In this document: one piece after another, positions 2,645-57,603 of the stretch
Layout: the number at the start of each line of letters is the position of its first letter
How positions within the stretch are numbered: position 1 is the first letter of the stretch
Source: Malacoraja senta
Lineage: Eukaryota
Length of the DNA stretch: 64,000 bases
Assembly (NCBI GenBank): GCA_038087875.1
Contig: CM075979.1
Coordinates: forward strand, 39,990,001 to 40,054,000
Direction of reading: 5' to 3'
Notes under the pieces: model-generated
Databases searched by the model: none
The model's input: the letters and a program-made list of their open reading frames with translations, nothing else
What the model was told of the DNA's origin: nothing
Translations under genes and position numbers: made by a program

Positions 2645-2849
2645 AGACAAAAATGCTGGAGAAACTCAGTGGGTGCGGCAGCATCTATGGAGCGAAGGAA
2701 ATAGGCAACGTTTCGAGCCGAAATCCTTCTTCAGGCCCGAAACGTTGCCTATTTCCTTCGCTCCATAGATGCTGCCGCACCTGCTGAGGTTCTCCAGCAT
2801 TTTTGTCTACCTTCGATTTTCCAGCATCTGCAGTTCCTTCTTGAACAAA
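2645..2849. mobile_element. Hairpin (inverted pLTR) Penelope-derived insertion
   Basis: ~80-bp inverted arms; 14-bp TSD atagaatatgagct (2631..2644, 2850..2863). Confidence 0.85.
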
Positions 2850-3414: not shown

Positions 3415-3878
3415 AGATTTGTGAAGATTTCAGAGATGTTCCAGGTCGAGGACCTGAGCTACAGGGAGAGGTTGGGCAGATTATGACTATATTCCTTGGA
3501 GCATGGGAGGATGAGAGGTGATCTTAAAGAGGTGTGCAAGATCATGAGGGGAATAGATAGGGTAGCAGCATAACGTCTTTCATCCAGGGAATCAAGAACC
3601 AGAAGATATAGGTTTAAGAAGAGAGGGGAAAGATAATAATGGGAAACTGAGGGCCAATGTTTTTACACAGCGTGTGGTAGGTATGAGCTGCTGGAGGAGG
3701 TAGTTGAGGCAGGTACTGTAACATTTGAAAGTCATTTGGACCTGTACATGGATAGGAAAGGTTTAGAGGGATATATGTCAAATGCGGGCAAGTGGGACTA
3801 GTGTAGATGGAGCACCTTGGTTGGCATAGACAAGCTAGGCCCAGGGACCCGTTTATGTGTTGTGTGACTATGACTCTA
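3415..3878 (+). mobile_element. CR1 LINE 3' fragment
   Basis: SYRERL..LYSLE..RMRGDL motifs; gactatgactct tail. Confidence 0.8.
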
Positions 3879-13811: not shown

Positions 13812-13990
13812 AACATTCCCCACGTGTGGAATTTCTCCAATCAATGCAGATACCGTGGCTCATGCATGTCTCTGCATAACTTTGCAAACTGGAGCACATG
13901 ATGGACGTACTTGGTGTCAGACACTCATCGTGAATGCATGCCTGGTAGTAGGAGTCTGGTGGAACCATGGCATGACATTTTGCAAACAGC
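13812..13990 (-). CDS. Mucin exon: C8-4 (LFAKCHAMVPPDSYYQAC...CIDWRNSTRGEC)
   Basis: tctag/gtaag, 179 bp. Confidence 0.93.
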
Positions 13991-14385
13991 CTAGAAATAA
14001 TAAATATCATTAAAGGAGGGGGGGACAAAGGACAATGGGGACCCGGTGTGGGGGAAGCGCTTTGTAACTTAGTCAGCACCGTAGGTGATTGCTATTTGTA
14101 TACATTGTGTATGCAAGCAAATAATCTCACTGTGCCTAGTCAATAAAGTATTCCTATTCCTAAAGTTTGATGACATTTTAATTAAATGCATATTCTTAAT
14201 AAGAAGACGGGCATAGGTAAAGAGCAGTTTCATCTACCTTGAAAGAAAACCCTGAGCAGATGTATTTTAGATTTTCATCTGTTTCCGGCATAAATTTGCT
14301 TTAACCTCCATTAAATAGATATACGGTATATCATATTTTATTATTTGCATATTTCTTCCAAGAAAATCCACTTCTTATTCAGTGC

Positions 14386-17417: not shown

Positions 17418-17533
17418 AATTAGGCATAAACGTGTTATTGGGATAAATCTTCAACCTAAACTGTTTCTATTACTTACCTTCTTATACTAAACATTTTATT
17501 TAAAAAAATCTACAAAGCAATCTTCATCCTTAC

Positions 17534-17717
17534 CACACTGCCCTTGTGTCTTGTTTCCAAATATTTCACTCGGGAGTTTGATTGCAAAAGCAAAACCACT
17601 GAAAGTGACCTGGGCCTTTAATTGGGGAATGTCAACAATTATATTAATGCCCAAACTGATGATCTTCACTCCATGTTTTGAATATGGTAGAGAAACAGGA
17701 TTTCCATTGATTTTTAC
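17534..17717 (-). CDS. Mucin exon: VWD4 (VKINGNPVSLPY...FGNKTQGQC)
   Basis: tgcag/gtaag, 184 bp. Confidence 0.93.
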
Positions 17718-17768: not shown

Positions 17769-18985
17769 TGTAGATGACATGTGCATGTACCTTTAACATA
17801 GTGACCTCACCACTACTAACCACTCCCCACATCACTAGTATAATTACAAACTTCCCACCCAGTGCTCTCTCTCTGGTTCCGGTGACAGACCACGAACAGC
17901 TAGGGCAGTAAAGTATGTGTATCATGAATAAACAGTAGTAAAGAAACAGTGTGTTATGACTCCTCTTTACATGGTGTCAGAAGTGGGATTCGAATCCACG
18001 CCTCCATAATGGACAGGCGGCCTGACCACCTAGTAGACTGTCCCATTCTGACTTTTACCTGGCCCTCCTCAACCTTCGAAACATTTGCCGCGACGCTGCC
18101 TTGGGCTCGCCAGCACTACGGCTGATGTCTCGCACTACGAGACCTCCGATCCCGGTGACCCAGCGGTCCCTCGTTCCCTCTGTTCTCCAGCCTGCTGCTG
18201 TCCAGGAGCGCATTGCCCTCAAACAAGAAATCCAAAAGCGCTCCCACGACAAGTCCTGCCGTCCCCTCCTGCCTCTGTTCCCTGGCCAAGTTGTCCGGAT
18301 GCAGTCCCCCTCCAGTCACCCCAGGCTTGCCATCGTCGTCGGTACTGTTGGTTCGCCGCGGTCCTATCTAGTCGACCATGACGGTACTTTTTGCCGCCGG
18401 TCCCGCCAACATCTGCGGCTTGTTAACGAGCCCCCACCGCCGCCTGCAGACCCCTTTTCCCTACCACTGTCTGCCACGTTGCCTGCCCCTCCAGCTAGTC
18501 CTCCCTCGCCTGCGCGTCTTCCCGCTACTGCTCCTGCTTCCCCTGCTCCGTCTCCGTTTTCTCTTTCTCCTCCCGATTCCCCGGTTCTCTTACCCGCGCC
18601 TGCTCCTACTCATGTTCCTCCTGCAGAGGGGGGAGATGGCGAGCTGCGTACCCGGTCCAGGCGGGTGGTCAGGCCGCCTGTCCGTTATGGTGATTTTGCT
18701 TAACTGTTTGCTCACCTGCTCGTAGCGTATGAGACGTGGTCGCCCTGTCACTACGGTATTGCTTTTTATTTCCAAGGGGAAGGATGTAGATGACATGTGC
18801 ATGTACCTTTAACATAGTGACCTCACCACTACTAACCACTCCCCACATCACTAGTATAATTACAACCTTCCCACCCAGTGCTCTCTCTCTGGTTCCGGTG
18901 ACAGACCACGAACAGCGAGGGCAGTAAAGTATGTGTATCATGAATAAACAGTAATAAAGAAAGTGTGTTATGACTCCTCTTTACA
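17769..18985 (+). mobile_element. Internally deleted 1.2-kb Gypsy-type LTR element (LTR-PBS-integrase C-terminus-PPT-LTR)
   Basis: LTRs 17769..17971 and 18785..18985 (TGTA...TACA; 3 substitutions + 2-bp indel); ATTAT TSD; PBS from 17972; PPT aaggggaagga 18774..18784. Confidence 0.95.
18035..18703 (+). pseudogene. Gypsy integrase C-terminal remnant (K02A2.6/Mag-like)
   Basis: YLALLNLRN...SPALRLMSR...PGQVVRMQ...PRSYLV...RRSRQHL...RTRSRRVVRPPVRYGD. Confidence 0.8.
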
Positions 18986-19572: not shown

Positions 19573-19693
19573 TTACCCAGGCATTTTGTGTCTATCCTCT
19601 AAACTCTGCCTGCTCATCAACATCGATACATTATTTCAGCCACGCTGGTTCAACACATGCAGAAGGAAGAAAACTCAAAACAATGATGGTTAC

Positions 19694-19941
19694 CAGATTT
19701 TGAATTCCATCTGCAGCAATATTCCTGATTTGTATGTCAAGTTTTTCAAATTTGACGATGATACCGCGCTGGCAGGAGAGACTGTCTTGTGTGTCGCAGT
19801 AGTAATTGTCAATGTAAACACCAAAATTTTGACCTGATGACTTTGTATTTTCCACAAGCACGTAGGTGCAGCTTCCATCATAGTTATAATACTGTCCGTC
19901 GAAGGTAACAACATGTGAGCCTCCCCATCCATTGCAATGGC
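19694..19941 (-). CDS. Mucin exon: start of VWD4 (CNGWGGSHVVTFDG...NFGVYIDNYYC)
   Basis: cacag/gtaac, 248 bp. Confidence 0.93.
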
Positions 19942-26454: not shown

Positions 26455-27100
26455 ACATTTTGAAAATGTCATCACAAGTAGATGGAATAGCAAAGAAGAC
26501 AAAGAGTCTGCTTGCTTTCGGGGCTTTGAGTATAAGAGTTTGTCAGAAAAATTTGATAAGGCCACATTTGGAGTATTGTGTGCAGTTCTGATCGCCTCAA
26601 TACAGGAAGGATGTGGAAGCGTTGAAGAAGATGCAGACGAGGTTTACCAGGATGCTGCCTGGATAAGAGAGTATGAGCTTTAAAGACAAATTGGACAAAT
26701 GTGGATTGTTCCTCTGGAAGGTCGAAGGTTGTGGGGAGACATGAGAGAAGTACATAAAATTATGAGAGGCATGGATAGGGTCGACAGTCAAGATCTTATT
26801 ACCAGAATGGAAATGTCAAAGTCTAGAATTTATTGTTTTAAGGTCAGAAAGGGGAAAGTGGGAAGGAGATGTGCAAGACCAGTTTTTTTTTAAACAGTGG
26901 TGTGTGCCTGGATTGCACTGCCAGGAGTGGTGGTGGAAGCAGATGTGTTAGTGGTGCTTCTGAGCATTTAAAATAGGCACATGGATATGCAAGGAATGGA
27001 GGGACATGGATCGCAAAAGTAGAGGTGATAAGTTTAACTTGGAATCATTGACAGCAAAAACAGTGTGGGTCAAAGGGCCGATCCCTGTGTAGGTCTGTTC
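26455..27100 (+). mobile_element. CR1 LINE 3' fragment ending ~45 bp from the giant-exon donor
   Basis: RPHLEYCVQF..PQYRKDVEAL motifs. Confidence 0.82.
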
Positions 27101-27146
27101 TACGTTCCAAATGCTTTATCTAGCAAACTAAGCACCAGTAGCTTAC

Positions 27147-30100
27147 CTTGGGAATACACAGTTCCATTCACCATGCAGACACATTCTGTGATGGGAGAAG
27201 AGGAACTTGTGGTTGGATGAAGGGTAGAGTGCTCAATGGAACCAGTAGGTTGGGAAGAAAATGTTGAGGGCATCCCGGTCGTAGATGCAGACAAAGAAGT
27301 TGATGATCCACCAGTGGTGAGTCGAACAGTGACGGCAGTGGTGGTAGTCCATGAGGCGGTTGATGAAGAAGACTGGTTTACTCTGCTGGAGGTTGGAGCC
27401 ACTGAGGCTGATTCTGTGCTACCACTGTGAGTGCTAGGCACCACCAGTGTGCTATATGCAGACACAGTGATGGTAGTGCTGTTCGTTGTAGTTGAAAGGG
27501 GACTCGTGAAAGGAGATGATGGAATCATTGTCGTCGATGCTGCAGGAGAATATTGTGTTGCTGTTGTGGCAGAGAGTGTTGTGGGTTCTTCTGATGTTCT
27601 GGTTGTGGACGTTGTTCCTGTTTCAGGAGTTGTGGGGCTCGTGTGTAACTGAGTTGGTGTTGTGGGACTTCCAGTTGTGGTTGTATAAGTGGTTGAAAGT
27701 GGTGTTTTTGTTTCTGTTGTTGGGACGGTTGTTGGGGTGTGAGTGTGCAGTGTTGTGGTTTCCGATGATGATGAGCTTGTGGTTGTGGACGTTGTTCCTG
27801 TTTCAGGAGTTGTGCTTGTGGGCACCAATGGGGTCTGGGCAGTTGTTGTGGACTTGGTGGTTGTAGGTAATTCGGTAGTTTCTGTTAGTTCAGTTGTACA
27901 AATTGTGGTCAATTCTGGTGTAGTACTTGCTGGTGTACCTGAGACTGGAGATGTAGAGGGCATCTGCTCTGTTGTAAGTGTAGTGGGACGAGTTGTACTG
28001 GTTGTGATTTCAATGGTATGAGGGGTTGTTGATGTTGTCTCTCTGGCTGGAGATGTGGGGGTCATGTGTAGCTGTGTTGGTGTTGTGGGACTTGCGGTTG
28101 TGGTTGAATGTGGTGTTTTTGTTTCTGTTGTTGGGACGGTTGTTGGGGTGTGAGTGTGCAGTGTTGTGGTTTCCGATGATGTTGATGTTGTGGTTGTGGA
28201 CGTTGTTCCTGTTTCAGGAGTTGTGCTTGTGGGCACCAATGGGGTCTGGGTAGTTCTTGTGGACTTGGTGGTTGAAGGTAATACAGTAGTTTCTGTTAGT
28301 ACAGTTGTACAAGTTGTGGTCAATTCTGGTGTAGTACTTGCTGGTGTACCTGAGACTGGAGATGTAGAGTGCATCTGCTCTGTTGTAAGTGTAGTGGGAC
28401 CTGTTGTACTGGTTGTGATTTCAATGGTATGAGGGGTTGTTGATGTTGTCTCTCTGGCTGGAGATGTGGGGGTCGTGTGTAGCTGTGTTGGTGTTGTGGG
28501 ACTTCCTGTGTTGCTTGTAGAAACGGTGAAATATGGTGTGTTTGTTTCTGTGCTTGTGCCAGTTGATGGGCTGTGCGTCTGTATTGTCGTGGTTTCAGTT
28601 GATGTTGATGTGGTCGTGGTGGATCCTGTTTGTGTTTGAGGTGTTTTGGTTGTGATCACCTCTGTAGTTTCTGTAGTTCCTATTGACTTGGTGGTAAATG
28701 GTGTTTCAGTAGATTCATTTTTTTCAGTTGTGGAAGTTGTGGTCAGTTCAGGTGTGGAACTTTGTGGTGTTCCTGACACTGGAGATGTTGTGGTTGTGTG
28801 CTCTGTTGTCGGTGAAGTGGAACCAGTTGTTCTGGTTGTGGTTTCAATTGTATGAGGGGTTGTGGACATTGTTCCTGTTTCAGGAGTTGTGGGGCTCGTG
28901 TGTAGCTGAGTTGGTGTTGTGGGACTTCCAGTTGTGGTTGTAAAAGTGGTTGAAAGTGGTGTTTTTGTTTCTGTTGTTGGGACGGTTGTTGGGGTGTGAG
29001 TGTGCAGTGTTGTGGTTTCCGATGATGATGAGCTTGTGGTTGTGGACGTTGTTCCTGTTTCAGGAGTTGTGCTTGTGGGCACCAATGGGGTCTGGGTAGT
29101 TGTTGTGGACTTGGTGGTTGTAGGTAATTCAGTAGTTTCTGTTAGTTCAGTTGTACAAGTTGTGGTCAATTCTGGTGTAGTACTTGCTGGTGTACCTGAG
29201 ACTGGAGATGTAGAGGGCATCTGCTCTGTTGTAAGTGTAGTGGGACCTGTTGTACTGGTTGTGATTTCAATGGTATGAGGGGTTGTTGATGTTGTCTCCC
29301 TGGCTGGAGATGTGGGGGTCGTGTGTAGCTGTGTTGGTGTTGTGGGACTTGCGGTTGTGGTTGAATGTGGTGTTTTTGTTTCTGTTGTTGGGACGGTTGT
29401 TGGGGTGTGAGTGTGCAGTGTTGAGGTTTCCGATGATGTTGATGTTGTGGTTGTGGACGTTGTTCCTGTTTCAGGAGTTGTGCTTGTGGGCACCAATGGG
29501 GTCTGGGTAGTTCTTGTGGACTTGGTGGTTGAAGGTAATACAGTAGTTTCTGTTAGTTCAGTTGTACAAGTTGTGGTCAATTCTGGTGTAGTACTTGCTG
29601 GTGTACCTGAGACTGGAGATGTAGAGGGCATCTGCTCTGTTCTAAGTGTAGTGGGACCTGTTGTACTGGGTGTGATTTCAATGGTATGAGGGGTTGTTGA
29701 TGTTGTCTCTCTGGCTGGAGATGTGGGGGTCGTGTGTAGCTGTGTTGGTGTTGTGGGACTTCCTGTGTTGCTTCTAGAAACGGTGAAATATGGTGTGTTT
29801 GTTTCGGTGCTTGTGCCTGTTGATGGGCTGTGCGTCTGTATTGTCGTGGTTTCAGTTGATGTTGATGTGGTCGTGGTGGATCCTGTTTGTGTTTGAGGTG
29901 TTTTGGTTGTGATCACCTCTGTAGTTTCTGTAGTTCCTGTTGACTTGGTGGTAAATGGTGTTTCAGTAGATTCATTTTTTTCAGTTGTGGAAGTTGTGGT
30001 CAGTTCAGGTGTGGAACGTTGTGGTGTTCCTGACACTGGAGATGTTGTGGTTGTGTGCTCTGTTGTCGGTGAAGTGGAACCAGTTGTTCTGGTTGTGGTT

Positions 30101-33100
30101 TCAATTGTATGAGGGGTTGTGGACATTGTTCCTGTTTCAGGAGTTGTGGGGCTCGTGTGTAGCTGAGTTGGTGTTGTGGGACTTCCAGTTGTGGTTGTAA
30201 AAGTGGTTGAAAGTGGTGTTTTTGTTTCTGTTGTTGGGACGGTTGTTGGGGTGTGAGTGTGCAGTGTTGTGGTTTCCGATGATGATGAGCTTGTGGTTGT
30301 GGACGTTGTTCCTGTTTCAGGAGTTGTGCTTGTGGGCACCAATGGGGTCTGGGTAGTTGTTGTGGACTTGGTGGTTGTAGGTAATTCAGTAGTTTCTGTT
30401 AGTTCAGTTGTACAAATTGTGTTCAATTCTGGTGTAGTACTTGCTGGTGTACCTGAGACTGGAGATGTAGAGGGCATCTGCTCTGTTGTAAGTGTAGTGG
30501 GACCTGTTGTACTGGTTGTGATTTCAATGGTATGAGGGGTTGTTGATGTTGTCTCTCTGGCAGGAGATGTGGGGGTCGTGTGTAGCTGTGTTGGTGTTGT
30601 GGGACTTCCTGTGTTGCTTGTAGAAACGGTGAAATATGGTGTGTTTGTTTCTGTGCTTGTGCCAGTTGATGGGCTGTGCGTCTGTATTGTCGTGGTTTCA
30701 ATTGATGTTGATGTGGTCGTGGTGGATCCTGTTTGTGTTTGAGGTGTTTTGGTTGTGATCACCTCTGTAGTTTCTGTAGTTCCTATTGACTTGGTGGTAA
30801 ATGGTGTTTCAGTAGATTCATTTTTTTCAGTTGTGGAAGTTGTGGTCAGTTCAGGTGTGGAACTTTGTGGTGTTCCTGACACTGGAGATGTTGTGGTTGT
30901 GTGCTCTGTTGTCGGTGAAGTGGAACCAGTTATTCTGGTTGTGGTTTCAATTGTATGAGGGGTTGTGGACATTGTTCCTGTTTCAGGAGTTGTGGGGCTC
31001 GTGTGTAACTGAGTTGGTGTTGTGGGACTTCCAGTTGTGGTTGTAAAAGTGGTTGAAAGTGGTGTTTTTGTTTCTGTTGTTGGGACGGTTGTTGGGGTGT
31101 GAGTGTGCAGTGTTGTGGTTTCCGATGATGTTGATGTTGTGGTTGTGGACGTTGTTCCTGTTTCAGGAGTTGTGCTTGTGGGCACCAATGGGGTCTGGGT
31201 AGTTCTTGTGGACTTGGTGGTTGAAGGTAATACAGTAGTTTCTGTTAGTTCAGTTGTACAAGTTGTGGTCAATTCTGGTGTAGTACTTGCTGGTGTACCT
31301 GAGACTGGAGATGTAGAGGGCATCTGCTCTGTTGTAAGTGTAGTGGGACCTGTTGTACTGGGTGTAATTTCAATGGTATGAGGGGTTGTTGATGTTGTCT
31401 CTCTGGCTGGAGATGTGGGGGTCGTGTGTAGCTGTGTTGGTGTTGTTAGACTTCCTGTGTTGCTTGTAGAAACGGTGAAATATGGTGTGTTTGTTTCTGT
31501 GCTTGTGCCAGTTGATGGGCTGTGCGTCTGTATTGTCGTGGTTTCAGTTGATGTGGTCGTGGTGGATCCTGTTTGTGTTTGAGGTGTTTTGGTTGTGATC
31601 ACCTCTGTAGTTTCTGTAGTTCCTATTGACTTGGTGGTAAATGGTGTTTGAGTAGATTCATTTTTTTCAGTTGTGGAAGTTGTGGTCAGTTCAGGTGTGG
31701 AACTTTGTGGTGTTCCTGACACTGGAGATGTTGTGGTTGTGTGCTCTGTTGTCGTTGAAGTGGAACCAGTTGTTCTGGTTGTGGTTTCAATTGTATGAGG
31801 GGTTGTGGACATTGTTCCTGTTTCAGGAGTTGTGGGGCTCGTGTGTAACTGAGTTGGTGTTGTGGGACTTCCAGTTGTGGTTGTAAAAGTGGTTGAAAGT
31901 GGTGTTTTTGTTTCTGTTGTTGGGACGGTTGTTGGGGTGTGAGTGTGCAGTGTTGTGGTTTCCGATGATGATGAGCTTGTGGTTGTGGACGTTGTTCCTG
32001 TTTCAGGAGTTGTGCTTGTGGGCACCAATGGGGTCTGGGCAGTTGTTGTGGACTTGGTGGTTGTAGGTAATTCAGTAGTTTCTGTTAGTTCAGTTGTACA
32101 AATTGTGGTCAATTCTGGTGTAGTACTTGCTGGTGTACCTGAGACTGGAGATGTAGAGGGCATCTGCTCTGTTGTAAGTGTAGTGGGACGAGTTGTACTG
32201 GTTGTGATTTCAATGGTATGAGGGGTTGTTGATTTTGTCTCTCTGGCTGGAGATGTGGGGGTCGTGTGTAGCTGTGTTGGTGTTGTGGGACTTGCGGTTG
32301 TGGTTGAATGTGGTGTTTTAGTTTCTGTTGTTGGGATGGTTGTTGGGGTGTGAGTGTGCAGTGTTGTGGTTTCCGATGATGTTGATGTTGTGGTTGTGGA
32401 CGTTGTTCCTGTTTCAGGAGTTGTGCTTGTGGGCACCAATGGGGTCTGGGTAGTTCTTGTGGACTTGGTGGTTGAAGGTAATACAGTAGTTTCTGTTAGT
32501 ACAGTTGTACAGGTTGTGGTCAATTCTGGTGTAGTACTTGCTGGTGTACCTGAGACTGGAGATGTAGAGGGCATCTGCTCTGTTGTAAGTGTAGTGGGAC
32601 CTGTTGTTGTGGTTGTGATTTCAATGGTATGAGGGGTTGTTGATGTTGTCTCTCTGGCTGGAGATGTGGGGGTCGTGTGTAGCTGTGTTGCTGTTGTGGG
32701 ACTTCCTGTGTTGCTTGTAGAAACGGTGAAATATGGTGTGTTTGTTTCTGTGCTTGTGCCAGTTGATGGGCTGTGCGTCTGTATTGTCGTGGTTTCAGTT
32801 GATGTGGTCGTGGTGGATCCTGTTTGTGTTTGAGGTGTTTTGGTTGTGATCACCTCTGTAGTTTCTGTAGTTCCTATTGACTTGGTGGTAAATGGTGTTT
32901 GAGTAGATTCATTTTTTTCAGTTGTGGAAGTTGTGGTCAGTTCAGGTGTGGAACGTTGTGGTGTTCCTGACACTGGAGATGTTGTGGTTGTGTGCTCTGT
33001 TGTCGGTGAAGTGGAACCAGTTGTTCTGGTTGTGGTTTCAATTGTATGAGGGGTTGTGGACATTGTTCCTGTTTCAGGAGTTGTGGGGCTCGTGTGTAAC

Positions 33101-36100
33101 TGAGTTGGTGTTGTGGGACTTCCAGTTGTGGTTGTAAAAGTGGTTGAAAGTGGTGTTTTTGTTTCTGTTGTTGGGACAGTTGTTGGGGTGTGAGTGTGCA
33201 GTGTTGTGGTTTCCGATGATGATGAGCTTGTGGTTGTGGACGTTGTTCCTGTTTCAGGAGTTGTGCTTGTGGGCACCAATGGGGTCTGGGCAGTTGTTGT
33301 GGACTTGGTGGTTGTAGGTAATTCAGTAGTTTCTGTTAGTTCAGTTGTACAAATTGTGGTCAATTCTGGTGTAGTACTTGCTGGTGTACCTGAGACTGGA
33401 GATGTAGAGGGCATCTGCTCTGTTGTAAGTGTAGTGGGACGAGTTGTACTGGTTGTGATTTCAATGGTATGAGGGGTTGTTGATTTTGTCTCTCTGGCTG
33501 GAGATGTGGGGGTCGTGTGTAGCTGTGTTGGTGTTGTGGGACTTGCGGTTGTGGTTGAATGTGGTGTTTTAGTTTCTGTTGTTGGGATGGTTGTTGGGGT
33601 GTGAGTGTGCAGTGTTGTGGTTTCCGATGATGTTGATGTTGTGGTTGTGGACGTTGTTCCTGTTTCAGGAGTTGTGCTTGTGGGCACCAATGGGGTCTGG
33701 GTAGTTCTTGTGGACTTGGTGGTTGAAGGTAATACAGTAGTTTCTGTTAGTACAGTTGTACAGGTTGTGGTCAATTCTGGTGTAGTACTTGCTGGTGTAC
33801 CTGAGACTGGAGATGTAGAGGGCATCTGCTCTGTTGTAAGTGTAGTGGGACCTGTTGTTGTGGTTGTGATTTCAATGGTATGAGGGGTTGTTGATGTTGT
33901 CTCTCTGGCTGGAGATGTGGGGGTCGTGTGTAGCTGTGTTGCTGTTGTGGGACTTCCTGTGTTGCTTGTAGAAACGGTGAAATATGGTGTGTTTGTTTCT
34001 GTGCTTGTGCCAGTTGATGGGCTGTGCGTCTGTATTGTCGTGGTTTCAGTTGATGTGGTCGTGGTGGATCCTGTTTGTGTTTGAGGTGTTTTGGTTGTGA
34101 TCACCTCTGTAGTTTCTGTAGTTCCTATTGACTTGGTGGTAAATGGTGTTTGAGTAGATTCATTTTTTTCAGTTGTGGAAGTTGTGGTCAGTTCAGGTGT
34201 GGAACGTTGTGGTGTTCCTGACACTGGAGATGTTGTGGTTGTGTGCTCTGTTGTCGGTGAAGTGGAACCAGTTGTTCTGGTTGTGGTTTCAATTGTATGA
34301 GGGGTTGTGGACATTGTTCCTGTTTCAGGAGTTGTGGGGCTCGTGTGTAACTGAGTTGGTGTTGTGGGACTTCCAGTTGTGGTTGTAAAAGTGGTTGAAA
34401 GTGGTGTTTTTGTTTCTGTTGTTGGGACGGTTGTTGGGGTGTGAGTGTGCAGTGTTGTGGTTTCCGATGATGATGAGCTTGTGGTTGTGGACGTTGTTCC
34501 TGTTTCAGGAGTTGTGCTTGTGGGCACCAATGGGGTCTGGGCAGTTGTTGTGGACTTGGTGGTTGTAGGTAATTCAGTAGTTTCTGTTAGTTCAGTTGTA
34601 CAAATTGTGGTCAATTCTGGTGTAGTACTTGCTGGTGTACCTGAGACTGGAGATGTAGAGGGCATCTGCTCTGTTGTAAGTGTAGTGGGACGAGTTGTAC
34701 TGGTTGTGATTTCAATGGTATGAGGGGTTGTTGATTTTGTCTCTCTGGCTGGAGATGTGGGGGTCGTGTGTAGCTGTGTTGGTGTTGTGGGACTTGCGGT
34801 TGTGGTTGAATGTGGTGTTTTAGTTTCTGTTGTTGGGATGGTTGTTGGGGTGTGAGTGTGCAGTGTTGTGGTTTCCGATGAAGTTGATGTTGTGGTTGTG
34901 GACGTTGTTCCTGTTTCAGGAGTTGTGCTTGTGGGCACCAATGGGGTCTGGGTAGTTCTTGTGGACTTGGTGGTTGAAGGTAATACAGTAGTTTCTGTTA
35001 GTACAGTTGTACAAGTTGTGGTCAATTCTGGTGTAGTACTTGCTGGTGTACCTGAGACTGGAGATGTAGAGGGCATCTGCTCTGTTGTAAGTGTAGTGGG
35101 ACCTGTTGTTGTGGTTGTGATTTCAATGGTATGAGGGGTTGTTGATGTTGTCTCTCTGGCTGGAGATGTGGGGGTCGTGTGTAGCTGTGTTGGTGTTGTG
35201 GGACTTCCTGTGTTGCTTGTAGAAACGGTGAAATATGGTGTGTTTGTTTCTGTGCTTGTGCCAGTTGATGGGCTGTGCGTCTGTATTGTCGTGGTTTCAG
35301 TTGATGTTGATGTGGTCGTGGTGGATCCTGTTTGTGTTTGAGGTGTTTTGGTTGTGATCACCTCTGTAGTTTCTGTAGTTCCTATTGACTTGGTGGTAAA
35401 TGGTGTTTCAGTAGATTCATTTTTTTCAGTTGTGGAAGTTGTGGTCAGTTCAGGTGTGGAACTTTGTGGTGTTCCTGACACTGGAGATGTTGTGGTTGTG
35501 TGCTCTGTTGTCGGTGAAGTGGAACCAGTTGTTCTGGTTGTGGTTTCAATTGTATGAGGGGTTGTGGACATTGTTCCTGTTTCAGGAGTTGTGGGGCTCG
35601 TGTGTAACTGAGTTGGTGTTGTGGGACTTCCAGTTGTGGTTGTAAAAGTGGTTGAAAGTGGTGTTTTTGTTTCTGTTGTTGGGACGGTTGTTGGGGTGTG
35701 AGTGTGCAGTGTTGTGGTTTCCGATGATGATGAGCTTGTGGTTGTGGATGTTGTTCCTGTTTCAGGAGTTGTGCTTGTGGGCACCAATGGGGTCTGGGCA
35801 GTTGTTGTGGACTTGGTGGTTGTAGGTAATTCAGTAGTTTCTGTTAGTTCCGTTGTACAAATTGTGTTCAATTCTGGTGTAGTACTTGCTGGTATACTTG
35901 AGACTGGAGATCTAGAGGGCATTTGCTCTGTTGTAAGTGTAGTGGGACGAGTTGTGCTGGTTGTGATTTCAATGGTATGAGGGGTTGTTGATGTTGTCTC
36001 TCTGGCTGGAGATGTGGGGGTCGTGTGTAGCTGTGTTGGTGTTGTGGGACTTGCGGTTGTGGTTGAATGTGGTGTTTTTGTTTCTGTTGTTGGGACGGTT

Positions 36101-39100
36101 GTTGGGGTGTGAGTGTGCAGTGTTGTGGTTTCCGATGATGTTGATGTTGTGGTTGTGGACGTTGTTCCTGTTTCAGGAGTTGTGCTTGTGGGCACCAATG
36201 GGGTCTGGGTAGTTCTTGTGGACTTGGTGGTTGAAGGTAACACAGTAATTTCTGTTACTACAGTTGTACAAGTTGTGGTCAATTCTGGTGTTGTACTTGC
36301 TGGTGTACCTGAGACTGGAGATGTAGAGGGCATCTGCTCTGTTGTAAGTGTAGTGGGACCTGTTGTTGTGGTTGTGATTTCAATGGTATGAGGGGTTGTT
36401 GATGTTGTCTCTCTGGCTGGAGATGTGGGGGTCGTGTGTAGCTGTGTTGGTGTTGTGGGACTTCCTGTGTTGCTTGTAGAAACGGTGAAATATGGTGTGT
36501 TTGTTTCTGTGCTTGTGCCAGTTGATGGGCTGTGTGTCTGTATTGTCGTGGTTTCAGTTGATGTTGATGTGGTCGTGGTGGATCCTGTTTGTGTTTGAGG
36601 TGTTTTGGTTGTGATCACTTCTGTAGTTTCTGTAGTTCCTATTGACTTGGTGGTAAATGGTGTTTCAGTAGATTCATTTTTTACAGTTGTGGAAGTTGTG
36701 GTCAGTTCAGGTGTGGAACTTTGTGGTGTTCCTGACACTGGAGATGTTGTGGTTGTGTGCTCTGTTGTCGGTGAAGTGGAACCAGTTGTTCTGGTTGTGG
36801 TTTCAATTATATGAGGGGTTGTGGACATTGTTCCTGTTTCAGGAGTTGTGGGGCTCGTATGTAACTGAGTTGGTGTTGTGGGACTTCCAGTTGTGGTTGT
36901 AAAAGTGGTTGAAAGTGGTGTTTTTGTTTCTGTTGTTGGGACGGTTGTTGGGGTGTGAGTGTGCAGTGTTGTGGTTTCCGATGATGATGAGCTTGTGGTT
37001 GTGGACGTTGTTCCTGTTTCAGGAGTTGTGCTTGTGGGCACCAATGGGGTCTGGGCAGTTGTTGTGGACTTGGTGGTTGTAGGTAATTCAGTAGTTTCTG
37101 TTAGTTCAGTTGTACAAGTTGTGGTCAATTCTGGTGTAGTACTTGCTGGTGTACCTGAGACTGGAGATGTAGAGGGCATCTGCTCTGTTGTAAGTGTAGT
37201 GGGACCTGTTGTACTGGTTGTGATTTCAATGGTATGAGGGGTTGTTGATGTTGTCTCTTTGGCTGGAGATGTGGGGGTCGTGTGTAGCTGTGTTGGTGTT
37301 GTGGGACTTCCTGTGTTGCTTGTAGAAACGGTGAAATATGGTGTGTTTGTTTCTGTGCTTGTGCCAGTTGATGGGCTGTGCGTCTGTATTGTCGTGGTTT
37401 CAGTTGATGTTGATGTGGTCGTGGTGGATCCTGTTTGTGTTTGAGGTGTTTTGGTTGTGATCACCTCTGTAGTTTCTGTAGTTCCTATTGACTTGGTGGT
37501 AAATGGTGTTTCAGTAGATTCATTTTTTTCAGTTGTGGAAGTTGTGGTCAGTTCAGGTGTGGAACTTTGTGGTGTTCCTGACACTGGAGATGTTGTGGTT
37601 GTGTGCTCTGTTGTCGGTGAAGTGGAACCAGTTGTTCTGGTTGTGGTTTCAATTGTATGAGGGGTTGTGGACATTGTTCCTGTTTCAGGAGTTGTGGGGC
37701 TCGTGTGTAACTGAGTTGGTGTTGTGGGACTTCCAGTTGTGGTTGTAAAAGTGGTTGAAAGTGGTGTTTTTGTTTCTGTTGTTGGGACGGTTGTTGGGGT
37801 GTGAGTGTGCAGTGTTGTGGTTTCCGATGATGATGAGCTTGTGGTTGTGGACGTTGTTCCTGTTTCAGGAGTTGTGCTTGTGGGCACCAATGGGGTCTGG
37901 GCAGTTGTTGTGGACTTGGTGGTTGTAGGTAATTCAGTAGTTTCTGTTAGTTCCGTTGTACAAATTGTGTTCAATTCTGGTGTAGTACTTGCTGGTATAC
38001 TTGAGACTGGAGATCTAGAGGGCATCTGCTCTGTTGTAAGTGTAGTGGGACGAGTTGTGCTGGTTGTGATTTCAATGGTATGAGGGGTTGTTGATGTTGT
38101 CTCTCTGGCTGGAGATGTGGGGGTCGTGTGTAGCTGTGTTGGTGTTGTGGGACTTGCGGTTGCGGTTGAATGTGGTGTTTTTGTTTCTGTTGTTGGGACG
38201 GTTGTTGGGGTGTGAGTGTGCAGTGTTGTGGTTTCCGATGATGTTGATGTTGTGGTTGTGGACGTTGTTCCTGTTTCAGGAATTGTGCTTGTGGGCACCA
38301 ATGGGGTCTGGGTAGTTCTTGTGGACTTGGTGGTTGAAGGTAATACAGTAATTTCTGTTAGTACAGTTGTGCAAGTTGTGGTCAATTCTGGTGTTGTACT
38401 TGCTGGTGTACCTGAGACTGGAGATGTAGAGGGCATCTGCTCTGTTGTAAGTGTAGTGGGACCTGTTGTTGTGGTTGTGATTTCAATGGTATGAGGGGTT
38501 GTTGATGTTGTCTCTCTGGCTGGAGATGTGGGGGTCGTGTGTAGCTGTGTTGGTGTTGTGGGACTTCCTGTGTTGCTTGTAGAAATGGTGAAATATGGTG
38601 TGTTTGTTTCTGTGCTTGTGCCAGTTGATGGGCTGTGCGTCTGTATTGTCGTGGTTTCAGTTGATGTTGATGTGGTCGTGGTGGATCCTGTTTGTGTTTG
38701 AGGTGTTTTGGTTGTGATCACTTCTGTAGTTTCTGTAGTTCCTATTGACTTGGTGGTAAATGGTGTTTCAGTAGATTCATTTTTTACAGTAGTGGAAGTT
38801 GTGGTCAGTTCAGGTGTGGAACTTTGTGGTGTTCCTGACACTGGAGATGTTGTGGTTGTGTGCTCTGTTGTCGGTGAAGTGGAACCAGTTGTTCTGGTTG
38901 TGGTTTCAATTATATGAGGGGTTGTGGACATTGTTCCTGTTTCAGGAGTTGTGGGGCTCGTATGTAACTGAGTTGGTGTTGTGGGACTTCCAGTTGTGGT
39001 TGTAAAAGTGGTTGAAAGTGGTGTTTTTGTTTCTGTTGTTGGGACGGTTGTTGGGGTGTGAGTGTGCAGTGTTGTGGTTTCCGATGATGATGAGCTTGTG

Positions 39101-42100
39101 GTTGTGGACGTTGTTCCTGTTTCAGGAGTTGTGCTTGTGGGCACCAATGGGGTCTGGGCAGTTGTTGTGGACTTGGTGGTTGTAGGTAATTCAGTAGTTT
39201 CTGTTAGTTCAGTTGTACAAGTTGTGGTCAATTCTGGTGTAGTACTTGCTGGTGTACCTGAGACTGGAGATGTAGAGGGCATCTGCTCTGTTGTAAGTGT
39301 AGTGGGACCTGTTGTACTGGTTGTGATTTCAATGGTATGAGGGGTTGTTGATGTTGTCTCTTTGGCTGGGGATGTGGGGGTCGTGTGTAGCTGTGTTGGT
39401 GTTGTGGGACTTCCTGTGTTGCTTGTAGAAACGGTGAAATATGGTGTGTTTGTTTCTGTGCTTGTGCCAGTTGATGGGCTGTGCGTCTGTATTGTCGTGG
39501 TTTCAGTTGATGTTGATGTGGTCGTGGTGGATCCTGTTTGTGTTTGAGGTGTTTTGGTTGTGATCACCTCTGTAGTTTCTGTAGTTCCTATTGACTTGGT
39601 GGTAAATGGTGTTTCAGTAGATTCATTTTTTTCAGTTGTGGAAGTTGTGGTCAGTTCAGGTGTGGAACTTTGTGGTGTTCCTGACACTGGAGATGTTGTG
39701 GTTGTGTGCTCTGTTGTCGGTGAAGTGGAACCAGTTGTTCTGGTTGTGGTTTCAATTGTATGAGGGGTTGTGGACATTGTTCCTGTTTCAGGAGTTGTGG
39801 GGCTCGTGTGTAACTGAGTTGGTGTTGTGGGACTTCCAGTTGTGGTTGTAAAAGTGGTTGAAAGTGGTGTTTTTGTTTCTGTTGTTGGGACGGTTGTTGG
39901 GGTGTGAGTGTGCAGTGTTGTGGTTTCCGATGATGATGAGCTTGTGGTTGTGGATGTTGTTCCTGTTTCAGGAGTTGTGCTTGTGGGCACCAATGGGGTC
40001 TGGGCAGTTGTTGTGGACTTGGTGGTTGTAGGTAATTCAGTAGTTTCTGTTAGTTCCGTTGTACAAATTGTGTTCAATTCTGGTGTAGTACTTGCTGGTA
40101 TACTTGAGACTGGAGATCTAGAGGGCATCTGCTCTGTTGTAAGTGTAGTGGGACGAGTTGTGCTGGTTGTGATTTCAATGGTATGAGGGGTTGTTGATGT
40201 TGTCTCTCTGGCTGGAGATGTGGGGGTCGTGTGTAGCTGTGTTGGTGTTGTGGGACTTGCGGTTGTGGTTGAATGTGGTGTTTTTGTTTCTGTTGTTGGG
40301 ACGGTTGTTGGGGTGTGAGTGTGCAGTGTTGTGGTTTCCGATGATGTTGATGTTGTGGTTGTGGACGTTGTTCCTGTTTCAGGAGTTGTGCTTGTGGGCA
40401 CCAATGGGGTCTGGGTAGTTCTTGTGGACTTGGTGGTTGAAGGTAATACAGTAATTTCTGTTAGTACAGTTGTACAAGTTGTGGTCAATTCTGGTGTTGT
40501 ACTTGCTGGTGTACCTGAGACTGGAGATGTAGAGGGCATCTGCTCTGTTGTAAGTGTAGTGGGACCTGTTGTTGTGGTTGTGATTTCAATGGTATGAGGG
40601 GTTGTTGATGTTGTCTCTCTGGCTGGAGATGTGGGGGTCGTGTGTAGCTGTGTTGGTGTTGTGGGACTTCCTGTGTTGCTTGTAGAAACGGTGAAATATG
40701 GTGTGTTTGTTTCTGTGCTTGTGCCAGTTGATGGGCTGTGCGTCTGTATTGTCGTGGTTTCAGTTGATGTTGATGTGGTCGTGGTGGATCCTGTTTGTGT
40801 TTGAGGTGTTTTGGTTGTAATCACTTCTGTAGTTTCTGTAGTTCCTATTGACTTGGTGGTAAATGGTGTTTCAGTAGATTCATTTTTTACAGTTGTGGAA
40901 GTTGTGGTCAGTTCAGGTGTGGAACTTTGTGGTGTTCCTGACACTGGAGATGTTGTGGTTGTGTGCTCTGTTGTCGGTGAAGTGGAACCAGTTGTTCTGG
41001 TTGTGGTTTCAATTATATGAGGGGTTGTGGACATTGTTCCTGTTTCAGGAGTTGTGGGGCTCGTATGTAACTGAGTTGGTGTTGTGGGACTTCCAGTTGT
41101 GGTTGTAAAAGTGGTTGAAAGTGGTGTTTTTGTTTCTGTTGTTGGGACGGTTGTTGGGGTGTGAGTGTGCAGTGTTGTGGTTTCCGATGGTGATGAGCTT
41201 GTGGTTGTGGACGTTGTTCCTGTTTCAGGTGTTGTGCTTGTGGGCACCAATGGGGTCTGGGCAGTTGTTGTGGACTTGGTGGTTGTAGGTAATTCAGTAG
41301 TTTCTGTTAGTTCAGTTGTACAAGTTGTTGTCAATTCTGGTGTAGTACTTGCTGGTGTACCTGAGACTGGAGATGTAGAGGGCATCTGCTCTGTTGTAAG
41401 TGTAGTGGGACCTGTTGTACTGGTTGTGATTTCAATGGTATGCGGGGTTGTTGATGATGTCTCTCTGGCTGGAGATGTGGGGGTCGTGTGTAGCTGTGTT
41501 GGTGTTGTGGGACTTGCGGTTGCGGTTGAATGTGGTGTTTTTGTTTCTGTTGTTGGGACGGTTGTTGGGGTGTGAGTGTGCAGTGTTGTGGTTTCCGATG
41601 ATGTTGATGTTGTGGTTGAGGACGTTGTTCCTGTTTCAGGAGTTGTGCTTGTGGGCACCAATGGAGTCTGGGTAGTTCTTGTGGACTTGGTGGTTGAAGG
41701 TAATACAGTAGTTTCTGTTAGTTCAGTTGTACAAGTTGTCAATTCTGGTGTAGTACTTGCTGGTGTACCTGAGACTGGAGATGTAGAGGGCATCTGCTCT
41801 GTTGTAAGTGTAGTGGGACGAGTTGTACTGGTTGTGATTTCAATGGTATGAGGGGTTGCTGATGTTGTCTCTCTGGCTGGAGATGTGGGAGTCGTGTGTA
41901 GCTGTGTTGGTGTTGTGGGACTTCCTGTGTTGCTTGTAGAAACGGTGAAATATGGTGTGTTTGTTTCTGTGCTTGTGCCCGTTGATGGGCTGTGCGTCTG
42001 TATTGTCGTGGTTTCAGTTGATGTTGATGTGGTCGTGGTGGATCCTGTTTGTGTTTGAGGTGTTTTGGTTGTGATCACCTCTGTAGTTTCTGTAGTTCCT

Positions 42101-43217
42101 ATTGACTTGGTGGTAAATGGTGTTTCAGTAGATTCATTTTTTTCAGTTGTGGAAGTTGTGGTCAGTTCAGGTGTGGAACTTTGTGGTGGTCCTGACACTG
42201 GAGATGTTGTGGTTGTGTGCTCTGTTGTCGGTGAAGTGGAACCAGTTGTTCTGGTTGTGGTTTCAATTGTATGAGGGGTTGTGGACATTGTTCCTGTTTC
42301 AGGAGTTGTGGGGCTCGTGTGTAACTGAGTTGGTGTTGTGGGACTTGCGGTTGTGGTTGAATGTGGTGTTTTTGTTTCTGTTGTTGGGACGGTTGTTGGG
42401 GTGTGAGTGTGCAGTGTTGTGGTTTCCGATGATGATGAGCTTGTGATTGTGGACATTGTTCCTGTTTCAGGAGTTGTGCTTGTGGGCACCAATGGGGTCT
42501 GGGTAGTTGTTGTGGACTTGGTGGTTGTAGGTAATTCAGTAGTTTCTGTTAGTTCAGTTGTACAAATTGTGGTCAATTCTGTTGTAGTACTTGTTGGTGT
42601 ACCTGAGACTAGAGATGTAGAGGGCATCTGCTCTGTTGTAAGTGTAGTGGGACGAGTTGTACTGGTTGTGATTTCAATGGTACGAGGGGTTGTTGATGTT
42701 GTCTCTCTGCCTGGAGATGTGGGGGTCGTGTGTAGCTGTGTTGGTGTTGTGGGACTTCCTGCTGTGGTTGTAAAAGTGGTGAAATACTGTGTTGATGTTG
42801 AATATGTTGTTCTGGATGTTATGGGGCTGGTTGTTGTGGGTATGGGGCTGGGCAAGGATGATGGGCCTATGGTTGTTGTGGTTGGCTCTGGTGTTGTTAT
42901 TGGAGGTTGGCAAATGTAGTCACAGCACTGTACCTGTATTTCATAGTCAAAGCACTGTTTGAATATATGTTGATCCTTGTTTCTGCATGTCAGCCCAAAG
43001 GAAACATTGCACTGCACTATCTGGTCGAGGTCTTCGAGATCCACGTTTGGTGCATGTGATGCTCTGCACTCAATCCTGCTTGGAGCATCGCAGTGCAGGT
43101 GTCCATGCTCATTGATTTTATCATATGTTTCAATATCACCTCCGCCGTAACCATGTGTCGGTTTGCTTACACTTATCCATTTGCTCCATTCGCATTGTTC
43201 CACGATCACACAAGTTG
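27147..43217 (-). CDS. Giant mucin central exon (16,071 bp): CysD + PTS tandem-repeat domain
   Basis: Within 5381-aa ORF; cacag acceptor at 43218-19, gtaag donor at 27146; CysD motif (CEWSKW...GGGDIET...CFDYEIQVQCC) at ~42910-43212. Confidence 0.95.
27600..42760 (-). repeat. Coding tandem array: ~36 monomers of 411/423 bp (23 A-type, 13 B-type) with 1251/1257-bp and 2103-bp higher-order repeats
   Basis: Spacing of recurrent antisense ORF starts: 411, 846, 840, 831 bp. Confidence 0.93.
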
Positions 43218-43419
43218 CTGTGGAGTTATGAAAAGATACATTCATTTAATTAAAGCAGTGTTATGCAGCAATTGAAGATGATTTCTTATGCATGGTTCTG
43301 CAGCCAGTATACGTTACTTATCAGAATAGATGCATCATATTTACAAATATATTATAGTAATCTCCTCTTGAGAATCATCAGTTATGTAATCTAGGGCTAC
43401 TGCTATGACATTCTGCATA

Positions 43420-51505: not shown

Positions 51506-51596
51506 CTGTTGGTGAAGCAGATCACTACGTCTGGTGGCAGTTGGAAGGAAAGACAGCAAGAGAAAACAATTTTTAAAAAATGAATGAATTCACAAC

Positions 51597-51836
51597 CGTC
51601 ATGGAACAATTTTTGAAGATGTCGCCCGTGATTATACTGCACTGCTTCTCTGCCCAGGCTTTACGATGTGGATTCTTAATGCAAGGATCACGATCGGCCA
51701 CAGCATCGGGACAAGAGGCTCCCAGCTTCCAGGAATTGCCAAACTCAGTCACTTCTGTAACGACGGACTGGCCTCTTGTCATCAAGTCATTGTTGGCATT
51801 TCCATCAAAGTTACCACATAAGCCACAGGTGTTATG
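51597..51836 (-). CDS. Mucin exon: VWD3/C8-3 (TCGLCGNFDG...FGNSWK...WAEKQCSII)
   Basis: tccag acceptor, weak gttgtg donor, 240 bp; CGLCG motif. Confidence 0.92.
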
Positions 51837-51872
51837 CTGGAATCAAAAAGAAAACCAACCATATATATCTAC

Positions 51873-57154: not shown

Positions 57155-57410
57155 CAATGTGTATCTCCTATTCTGATCAGTTCTCCAGGGTTTAGGATGG
57201 TGCCCTGATAGAGGCATGGGCATTGGATCGAGGGCACACATTTGTCTTTCTCGTTCATATATGTTCCTTCCTTGCATCCGCATCCATCCACCGGCACATG
57301 TTGGATTCCACAAGTGACGTCTTTCTCACTCAGTGAATGACAAGTGCGCCTGCAGCTCTTCATGTCATAACCGTACGTCTGTGTCTCTGGGCAGCTTTTT
57401 GTGTAAGAGT
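57155..57410 (-). CDS. Mucin exon: TIL-2/E (SCPETQTYGYDMKSCRRTC...PVDGCGC)
   Basis: tttag/gtaaat, 256 bp; overlaps ORF 57151..57363. Confidence 0.92.
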
Positions 57411-57603
57411 CTAAAACAGTTACAGAACATAAGAAACATAAGAGCTGAAAACAATCTAGTCAGTATCAAAAACTTTATAATAAATCTTGCTAAGGAGGCT
57501 CTCGTGTGACCATATCTTCCATATTCTGAAACGACTAGTTTTAATTCTGATTAGAGTTTATCAATCTCAAAATTCATATCAGAAGCTACATTAAATAAAA
57601 ACT

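What the first reader, a model, noticed from the sequence alone, without database searches (positions are those of the whole stretch)
27880..42580. PTS domain with a periodic two-state code: lone Cys (A units) versus N-glycan sequon (B units)
Seen: each of 23 A monomers carries exactly one Cys (PELTT[T/I]CTT[E/V]LTE). The 13 B monomers have Ser there and gain an NES sequon just downstream (PELTTTSTT[E/V]KNES). The two features are mutually exclusive and spaced ~137-282 aa apart over ~5,000 aa. Known: human gel-forming mucin PTS repeats are largely Cys-free, and cross-linking is assigned to D3, CK and CysD domains; some Cys-containing repeats are known in rodent Muc2. Inference: this mucin has only one CysD and may use regularly spaced free thiols as lateral disulfide cross-links or redox/metal sites that set gel mesh size.
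Basis: partly seen in the sequence, partly recalled or inferred. Interest (0 to 1): 0.72.

Follow-up and report, generated by a model that had tools for sequence, protein, structure and literature searches.

The report
Skate mucin repeats with lone cysteines
This is the giant sugar-carrying middle exon of a skate mucus-protein gene, and its regular "cysteine or N-glycan site" pattern is real but comes from recently copying three variant repeat units, with the N-glycan site missing in four related species and only the cysteines left as an untested oddity.

Summary
One 5,381-codon open frame (exon 27147-43217, minus strand) encodes a CysD domain and 36 tandem ~141-aa PTS monomers. There are 23 A units with one Cys each and 13 B units with Ser plus an NES sequon.

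The "two-state code" reading is not supported:
- The array is a higher-order repeat of three monomer types (A1, A2, B). Multi-monomer blocks of 1,251 and 2,103 nt are 99.1-99.8% identical, whereas A and B differ by about 25%.
- 33 of 141 aligned columns separate all A from all B, so Cys/Ser and the sequon are two of 33 lineage markers, in effect one independent contrast.
- Keeping Cys in 23 copies is expected by chance (0.54 hits expected).
- In contigs of four related species the B unit is present at multi-copy depth but reads Thr (ACG) where this genome has Asn, so there is no sequon.

The letters at the Cys codon in relatives were not shown, so Cys conservation stays open. Lone Cys is nevertheless rare in PTS domains: 4 in about 59,000 PTS residues across 29 vertebrate homologues, against 23 in 5,281 here. 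A cross-linking role is possible but untested. Earlier notes of this scan describe neighbouring skate mucin genes, not this feature.

The parts
27147..43217 (-). Giant central exon of a MUC2/MUC5-type gel-forming mucin gene (16,071 nt, open throughout)
   Evidence: ORF 27100-43245. Acceptor ...CTCCACAG|CAAC at 43218/43217 and donor CCCAAG|GTAAGC at 27147/27146. Flanking exons match shark and ray mucins.
42910..43212 (-). CysD domain (10 Cys, WSKW motif), the only one in the window
   Evidence: Pfam PF13330 Mucin2_WxxW, E 2.5e-26, full-length match. 71-74% identical to the CysD of Mustelus asterias and Mobula birostris mucins.
42610..42909 (-). Non-repeated PTS head (aa 113-212). Its last ~58 aa resemble the C-terminal half of a monomer.
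   Evidence: The stretch 42616-42789 is skipped in one relative's contig and uncovered in two others.
27523..42609 (-). Array of 36 tandem PTS monomers (137-141 aa): 13 A1, 10 A2, 13 B, arranged as a higher-order repeat of A2-A1-B trimers and A1-B dimers
   Evidence: Identity is 98-98.6% within a type, 75% for A1 vs B, and 99.1-99.8% between blocks.
42562..42564 (-). First of 23 lone Cys codons (TGT), one per A monomer; the last is at 27898-27900
42130..42138 (-). First of 13 NES sequons (AAT GAA TCT), one per B monomer; the last is at 28711-28719
   Evidence: The Asn codon reads ACG (Thr) in four related species.
30883..31305 (-). Recombinant monomer m28: A2-type first half joined to A1-type second half
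   Evidence: a direct trace of unequal exchange within the array.
27147..27522 (-). Non-repeated PTS tail ending in ECVCMVNGTVYSQ, the start of the post-PTS cysteine-rich region
51594..51842 (-). Upstream exon encoding the end of the third VWD domain (D3)
   Evidence: tblastn 71% to Mustelus protein residues 986-1068; Pfam VWD.
19685..19939 (-). Downstream exon encoding the start of the fourth VWD domain (D4)
   Evidence: tblastn 66%; Pfam VWD E 8.7e-16. A C8 exon lies at 13813-14031.

Best explanation
The region is the single giant central exon of a skate gel-forming mucin of the MUC2/MUC5 type: D2-D3, one CysD, about 5,270 aa of PTS, then D4. Its PTS rod is a tandem array of three monomer variants. 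Two old lineages of the monomer's first half exist: the a-type, found in A1 and A2, and the b-type, found in B. They differ by about 25% in DNA. Blocks of two, three or five monomers were then multiplied recently by unequal crossing-over and gene conversion, giving a higher-order repeat. The Cys (a-type) and the Ser plus NES (b-type) are simply two of 33 residues that mark these lineages, so their regular spacing and mutual exclusivity are inherited, not independently maintained. The NES sequon is a recent, lineage-specific change (Thr to Asn) that was homogenised through all 13 B copies of this species. Shown: the anatomy, the repeat hierarchy, the lack of a retention signal and the absence of the sequon in relatives. 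Inferred: the Cys arose once in an ancestral a-type unit and spread with it. I think it is most likely a tolerated passenger sitting among densely O-glycosylated threonines, at most forming occasional disulfides, rather than a designed cross-linking system.
For: Gene identity. Monomer types and identities. 33 of 141 columns separate all A from all B. Blocks of 1,251 and 2,103 nt are 99.1-99.8% identical, and the best self-match offsets are 1,257 and 2,103 nt. First-half divergence is 4% for A1 vs A2 and 25-27% for A vs B. A recombinant monomer, m28, is present. Within-type nonsynonymous codon change is 1.7% (A1), 3.2% (A2) and 1.7% (B). By my arithmetic this predicts 0.54 hits on the Cys codon over 23 copies (P of none about 0.58) and 0.66 hits on NES over 13 copies (P of none about 0.52). 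Within-type variants are nonsynonymous to synonymous at about 2:1, that is, weak constraint on residue identity. Four related species, whose CysD exon differs by 3.9-4.6%, carry the B unit at multi-copy depth with ACG (Thr) in place of AAT (Asn), and with the Ser codon unchanged. Between species the B unit differs by 4.3-7.8%, with 14-24 nonsynonymous against 2-8 synonymous codon changes. That exceeds the 0.2-0.9% between blocks within this array, so homogenisation postdates the species splits. Sequon density here (3.0 per 1,000 PTS aa) lies within the 0-7 range of other vertebrate mucins.
Against: Lone Cys is strikingly rare in the PTS domains of 29 vertebrate MUC2/MUC5 homologues: 4 in about 59,000 PTS residues, against 23 in 5,281 here. 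This suggests unpaired Cys is normally selected against, so its persistence in 23 copies of an intact 16-kb frame may mean it is useful or specially tolerated. The only change seen at any of the 23 Cys codons is synonymous, though a single event carries no weight. The Asn codon differs from the relatives' Thr codon at two bases and is fixed in all 13 copies, which could also reflect selection for the sequon in this species. The state of the Cys codon in relatives was not obtained. No expression data were found.
Confidence: 0.75

Rival explanations
1. The 23 regularly spaced Cys are functional free thiols or lateral inter-chain disulfides, or redox/metal sites, that set the mesh size of the gel and compensate for having only one CysD. 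The B units carry an N-glycan instead.
For: Lone Cys is almost absent from other vertebrate PTS domains, so 23 here is unusual. There is only one CysD in this exon. All 23 Cys codons are intact, and the only change among them is synonymous. A-type contigs at multi-copy depth exist in four relatives.
Against: There is no retention signal beyond chance. Spacing and exclusivity are by-products of block duplication. The sequon half of the 'code' is absent in four relatives. 23 is an odd number, and the Cys sits within runs of Thr that are expected to be O-glycosylated and to shield it (general knowledge, not tested). There is no biochemical or expression evidence.
Confidence: 0.13
2. The sequon, not the Cys, is the selected novelty. 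This species gained an N-glycan site in every B unit through a two-base change, and that change was driven through the array by selection.
For: The window has AAT where all four relatives have ACG, two substitutions in one codon, fixed in 13 of 13 copies.
Against: Gene conversion fixes neutral variants across arrays just as well. Two other Asn residues in the same unit also replace the relatives' Lys without creating sequons. Sequon density is ordinary. Occupancy is unknown.
Confidence: 0.07
3. Assembly artefact. The array, or its perfect Cys/NES regularity, results from collapsing or mis-joining near-identical repeats.
For: Blocks are 99.1-99.8% identical, the kind of sequence where copy number can be mis-assembled.
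Against: The frame stays open for 5,381 codons. Copies carry many private variants and one recombinant monomer. Both A-type and B-type units are recovered independently at multi-copy depth from four other species. Copy number may be off, but the unit types are real.
Confidence: 0.03

Closest known systems
Human MUC2 central exon (PTS-TR2, 98 units of 23 aa)
   Same: Both are one very large exon encoding a CysD followed by a long tandem-repeat PTS rod. Units are imperfect and fall into variants, and a few N-glycosylation sequons occur in the PTS (PMC6269512). NCBI names the manta-ray relative 'mucin-2'.
   Different: The monomer here is about 141 aa, not 23 aa. There is one CysD rather than two. 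The units form a three-type higher-order repeat, and each A unit has a lone Cys. The PTS sequences show no detectable homology. MUC2 versus MUC5 orthology was not resolved: both score about 50-52% identity.
Human MUC6 PTS (169-aa repeat units) and MUC5AC/MUC5B (PTS interrupted by CysD domains)
   Same: All have long repeat units in a gel-forming mucin central exon. MUC5AC/5B place cysteine-containing elements at intervals along the rod (PMC6269512, PMC9712336).
   Different: In MUC5AC/5B the interruptions are ~100-aa folded CysD domains with 10 internally paired Cys, which in MUC2 act non-covalently (PMC3195396). Here it is one isolated Cys in an otherwise unstructured Thr-rich stretch. MUC6 lacks the fourth VWD, which this gene has.
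Higher-order tandem repeats homogenised by unequal crossing-over (as in centromeric alpha-satellite arrays; general knowledge)
   Same: Diverged monomers (75-89% identical) are grouped in multi-monomer blocks that are nearly identical to each other (99+%). Arrays are more uniform within a species than between species.
   Different: This array is protein-coding and kept in frame.

Membership tests
Gel-forming mucin, MUC2/MUC5 type | N-terminal VWD-C8-TIL assemblies (D1-D3) | tested here: met
   Exons for D2 and D3 lie upstream on the minus strand: TIL at 57166-57417 and the end of a VWD at 51594-51842. They are 57-86% identical to Mustelus protein residues 528-1207. D1 lies outside the window.
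Gel-forming mucin, MUC2/MUC5 type | CysD (Mucin2_WxxW) domain associated with the PTS region | tested here: met
   PF13330, E 2.5e-26, 92.6 bits against a cut-off of 22.4, full-length.
Gel-forming mucin, MUC2/MUC5 type | Large central PTS domain rich in Pro, Thr and Ser, encoded by one big exon | tested here: met
   16,071-nt exon with 66% Thr+Ser+Pro.
Gel-forming mucin, MUC2/MUC5 type | Fourth VWD-C8 unit after the PTS (absent in MUC6 and MUC19) | tested here: met
   VWD exon at 19685-19939 (E 8.7e-16) and C8 exon at 13813-14031 (E 5.1e-19). The criterion comes from PMC4948705.
Gel-forming mucin, MUC2/MUC5 type | C-terminal cystine knot | not tested
   The window ends at about residue 4179 of the 4,476-aa Mustelus relative, so the CK region lies outside it.
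Higher-order tandem repeat shaped by concerted evolution | Blocks of several diverged monomers are much more alike than the monomers within a block | tested here: met
   Blocks are 99.1-99.8% identical, against 75-89% between monomer types.
Higher-order tandem repeat shaped by concerted evolution | Copies within a species are more alike than orthologous copies between species | tested here: met
   B units are 98.4% identical within the array, against 92.2-95.7% to the B-type contigs of four relatives. A species-specific codon (AAT) is fixed in all 13 copies.
Conserved functional site pair (Cys in A, N-glycan sequon in B) | Sequon present in the homologous unit of related species | tested here: not met
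   ACG (Thr) replaces AAT (Asn) in the only contig laid there in each of four relatives. Minor copies cannot be excluded, because contigs drop rare variants.
Conserved functional site pair (Cys in A, N-glycan sequon in B) | Cys present in the homologous unit of related species | tested here: inconclusive
   A-type contigs exist in all four relatives. The letters at 42562-42564 fell among the 79 rows the tool did not print, and the tool's single call was used.
Conserved functional site pair (Cys in A, N-glycan sequon in B) | Codon retention above the background substitution rate within the array | tested here: not met
   Expected hits are 0.54 (Cys) and 0.66 (NES), so observing none has P about 0.58 and 0.52 (arithmetic).
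CysD-like cross-linking module | Folded domain of about 100 aa with 10 conserved Cys and a WxxW motif | tested here: not met
   A units have a single Cys and no Trp in a Thr-rich context.

The most novel reading that the evidence does not exclude
A vertebrate gel-forming mucin has evolved a way to add covalent or redox-reactive nodes along its glycosylated rod without CysD domains: one unpaired Cys every 137-282 residues. This class of residue is otherwise almost purged from vertebrate PTS domains, and it would give skate mucus a tunable, thiol-dependent mesh.
Probability: 0.12. Interest if true: 0.65.

Novelty: new member of a known kind. Interest (0 to 1): 0.27.

Why it matters
The finding shows how a striking "code-like" periodicity in a protein can arise purely from block duplication of a few repeat variants. 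It also shows how fast single-residue features, here an N-glycan sequon, are gained and homogenised across a mucin array between close species. One point is worth keeping. Isolated cysteines are nearly absent from the PTS domains of other vertebrate MUC2/MUC5 mucins sampled here, so a skate mucin carrying 23 of them is a cheap natural test case. It could show whether unpaired thiols in the glycosylated rod are tolerated, capped or used for cross-linking.

Tried and rejected
1. Searching for the PTS repeat family in protein databases found nothing. A word-indexed search with aa 627-1186 scored 1,169 candidates with none significant. An exhaustive HMMER search of 1.84 billion representatives with an A2-A1-B trimer gave 0 hits. 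Low-complexity correction and representative clustering limit both, so these are weak negatives.

2. Shark and ray orthologues for a cross-species Cys test could not be used.
- In the Mustelus asterias model (P0034), the PTS is translated out of frame (N/H/I-rich). A degenerate back-reading gave 0 positions where Cys is forced and 33 ambiguous C/F/S/Y positions, which is inconclusive.
- The Mobula birostris 'mucin-2' model (P0037) stops just after the CysD.

3. No RNA run holding the exon was found, so expression was not shown.

4. MUC2 versus MUC5 assignment by summed exon scores is a tie at about 50-52% identity.

5. The apparent lone Cys in amphioxus and mussel mucins were rejected as precedents. 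They are mostly the first Cys of CysD domains, picked up by my 30-residue isolation rule.

6. The literature searches found no description of periodic lone Cys in mucin PTS repeats and nothing on this skate mucin.
Full report
**What is there**

The window holds one very long open frame on the minus strand, 27100-43245, of 5,381 codons. It is 42% Thr, 13% Ser and 11% Pro. Tandem Repeats Finder reports a 423-nt period with 36.2 copies over 27626-42785. A strong strand-composition skew marks the same span.

Splice signals bound a single exon at 43217 (acceptor CACAG|CAAC) and 27147 (donor CAAG|GTAAGC).

The exon begins with a full CysD domain (Pfam PF13330, E 2.5e-26). It continues with 100 aa of non-repeated PTS, 36 tandem monomers, and a 110-aa PTS tail. 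It ends with ECVCMVNGTVYSQ.

The rest of the window, on the same strand, carries exons for D2 and D3 upstream and for D4 and C8 downstream. These are 55-86% identical to a 4,476-aa Mustelus asterias protein and about 69% identical to a Mobula birostris protein that NCBI names mucin-2. The presence of CysD and of a fourth VWD places the gene in the MUC2/MUC5 group, following the criteria of Lang et al. 2016 (PMC4948705). MUC2 and MUC5 could not be told apart by score. Earlier notes of this scan call the genome a skate and place other gel-forming mucin genes 124 kb and 262 kb away. I did not test those notes.

**Check of the observation**

- Cutting at the VSGTP motif gives 36 monomers of 136-141 aa, in the order ABAABAABABAABABAABAABAABAABABABAABAA.
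- All 23 A monomers have one Cys at the same aligned column: TGT 22 times, and TGC once in monomer 11.
- All 13 B monomers have Ser (TCC) there, and AAT-GAA-TCT (NES) five residues on.
- Cys-to-Cys spacings are 137, 277, 280 or 282 aa, from residue 228 to 5116.

**Why the pattern exists**

The monomers fall into three types, A1 (141 aa), A2 (137 aa) and B (141 aa).

| Comparison | DNA identity |
|---|---|
| Within a type | 98.0-98.6% |
| A1 vs A2 | 89% |
| A2 vs B | 82% |
| A1 vs B | 75% |

Each monomer is a mosaic of two halves.
- The first half exists in two old forms. A1 and A2 differ by 4% there, while A and B differ by 25-27%.
- The second half also has two forms. A2 and B share one of them (5.6% apart), and A1 has the other.

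Multi-monomer blocks are almost identical to one another.
- A2-A1-B trimers of 1,251 nt are 99.1-99.8% identical.
- Five-monomer blocks of 2,103 nt are 99.6% identical.
- The best self-match offsets of the array are 1,257 and 2,103 nt, ahead of the 423-nt monomer period.

Monomer 28 is a recombinant of an A2 first half and an A1 second half. This is the signature of a higher-order repeat built by unequal exchange.

In the protein alignment, 33 of 141 columns have completely disjoint residues between all 23 A and all 13 B units. The Cys/Ser column and the Thr/Asn column that makes the sequon are two of those 33. "Mutually exclusive" therefore describes one historical split between two unit lineages, not 36 independent observations. 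The "period" is the block length.

Relative to type consensus, nonsynonymous codon changes affect 30 of 1,801 codons in A1, 44 of 1,373 in A2 and 31 of 1,827 in B.
- From these rates I expect 0.54 nonsynonymous hits on one given codon over the 23 A copies, so the probability of seeing none is about 0.58.
- I expect 0.66 hits on the three NES codons over 13 B copies, so the probability of none is about 0.52.

Perfect retention is therefore what chance predicts. Within-type changes run about 2 nonsynonymous to 1 synonymous, so residue identity in this rod is weakly constrained.

**Related species**

Public runs of at least eight other coded organisms hold near-identical parts of the CysD exon. 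I laid contigs of four of them (X13, X10, X3, X6) on 41776-43290, which covers the CysD, the PTS head, the first A unit and the first B unit.
- Their CysD exons differ from the window by 18-23 letters in about 465-500, that is 3.9-4.6%.
- A B-type contig of 410-746 nt lies on the first B unit in every run. Its depth is 6 to 20 times that of the single-copy CysD contig; the tool warns this is only a rough guide to copy number.
- At 42136 (A>C) and 42137 (T>G), all four relatives differ from the window in the whole depth laid. This turns the Asn codon AAT into ACG, Thr.
- Applying the listed differences gives ...PELTTTSTTEKTESTETPF... in all four: the Ser is kept and the sequon is absent.
- The A units of the window also have Thr at this column, so Thr is the likely older state. 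The Asn is a change of this species' lineage that has been homogenised through all 13 B copies.

Between species the B unit differs by 4.3-7.8%, with 14-24 nonsynonymous against 2-8 synonymous codon changes. That is far more than the 0.2-0.9% between blocks within the array, so homogenisation is younger than the species splits.

Contigs can hide minority copies, and a paralogous source cannot be strictly excluded.

**The Cys in relatives: not obtained**

A-type contigs are present in all four relatives. They show 8-10 differences over 112-160 nt from the first A unit. The window's own A copies differ from that unit by 4-12 and its B copies by 43-46.

The difference table was cut after 40 rows, and the rows for 42474-42618 were not printed.

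With 9 differences per 160 nt, a neutral codon would survive unchanged about 83% of the time (my arithmetic). These relatives would therefore be only a weak test in any case. More distant species were out of reach. The Mustelus model reads the PTS out of frame, the Mobula model stops after the CysD, and neither locus's DNA was served.

**How unusual the features are**

I scanned the homologues returned by the CysD searches for Cys lying in PTS-rich stretches with no other Cys within 30 residues.
- In 29 vertebrate MUC2/MUC5 proteins, totalling about 59,000 PTS residues by my sum of the table, there are four such Cys in all, each a singleton. Two of them sit in a similar TT-C-TT context.
- The window has 23 in 5,281 PTS residues.
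- The hits in amphioxus and mussel proteins are first cysteines of CysD domains and do not count.

The sequon is not: 3.0 per 1,000 PTS residues here, against 0-7 per 1,000 in the other vertebrate proteins. Human MUC2 PTS-TR2 also has two sequons (PMC6269512).

**Reading**

Best supported: this is a skate MUC2/MUC5-type mucin whose PTS rod is a recently amplified higher-order repeat. The Cys and the NES are markers of two unit lineages carried along by block duplication and gene conversion.

The sequon half of the proposed code fails the cross-species test. The Cys half is untested across species and shows no within-gene signal.

A functional role for the thiols cannot be excluded. Options include lateral disulfides, capping by small thiols, or attachment of other mucus proteins. 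The rarity of Cys in other PTS domains makes this worth a simple experiment, but nothing here demonstrates it.

For human MUC2 the published evidence is that CysD dimers are non-covalent (PMC3195396).

**Limits**
- There are no expression data.
- Copy number in such an array may be imperfectly assembled, although unit types are confirmed independently in four species.
- The PTS family gave no database hits, which may partly reflect low-complexity filtering.
- Literature searches found no description of periodic lone Cys in mucin repeats. The library searched lacks most subscription journals.

Noticed in passing
window 1-493: A 40-nt G-rich minisatellite with 12.3 copies at 97% match lies at the very start of the window.
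   Followed up: no
P0034 (Mustelus asterias LOC144499246), residues ~1340-3560: The public gene model translates the whole PTS domain out of frame (Asn/His/Ile-rich, 2,200 aa). Shifting by one base gives a normal Thr/Ser/Pro sequence. The model also lists PF14527 among its Pfam families, which is not a mucin family, and contains a non-mucin stretch just before D4.
   Followed up: partly
P0037 (Mobula birostris 'mucin-2'): The model ends about 50 residues after the CysD, so the manta-ray PTS domain is missing from the annotated protein. A separate 660-aa gene is called about 10 kb downstream of it.
   Followed up: no
window 42616-42789: One relative (X3) has a contig joining 42615 directly to 42790. 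Two others have no contig there, and their CysD contigs run straight into SPVSGTPAS. This genome therefore seems to have an extra 58-aa partial monomer between the CysD and the first full unit.
   Followed up: partly
window 27523-42609 (A1 vs A2 first halves): All 9 codon differences between the A1 and A2 consensus first halves are nonsynonymous, with none synonymous. This is an odd ratio for so few changes, and it was not explained.
   Followed up: no
window 41776-42234 (first B unit): Besides the sequon Asn, two further Asn residues in the B unit (TNTP, SNTG) are Lys in all four relatives. So three changes to Asn accumulated in this species' B unit.
   Followed up: no
window 17972-18008: An earlier first-reader note of this scan reports a long tRNA-Leu primer-binding site here. 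The position is in the intron region between the D4 exons (19685-19939 and 17511-17717) and in a stretch with raised G+C, which suggests a retroelement insertion in the mucin gene.
   Followed up: no
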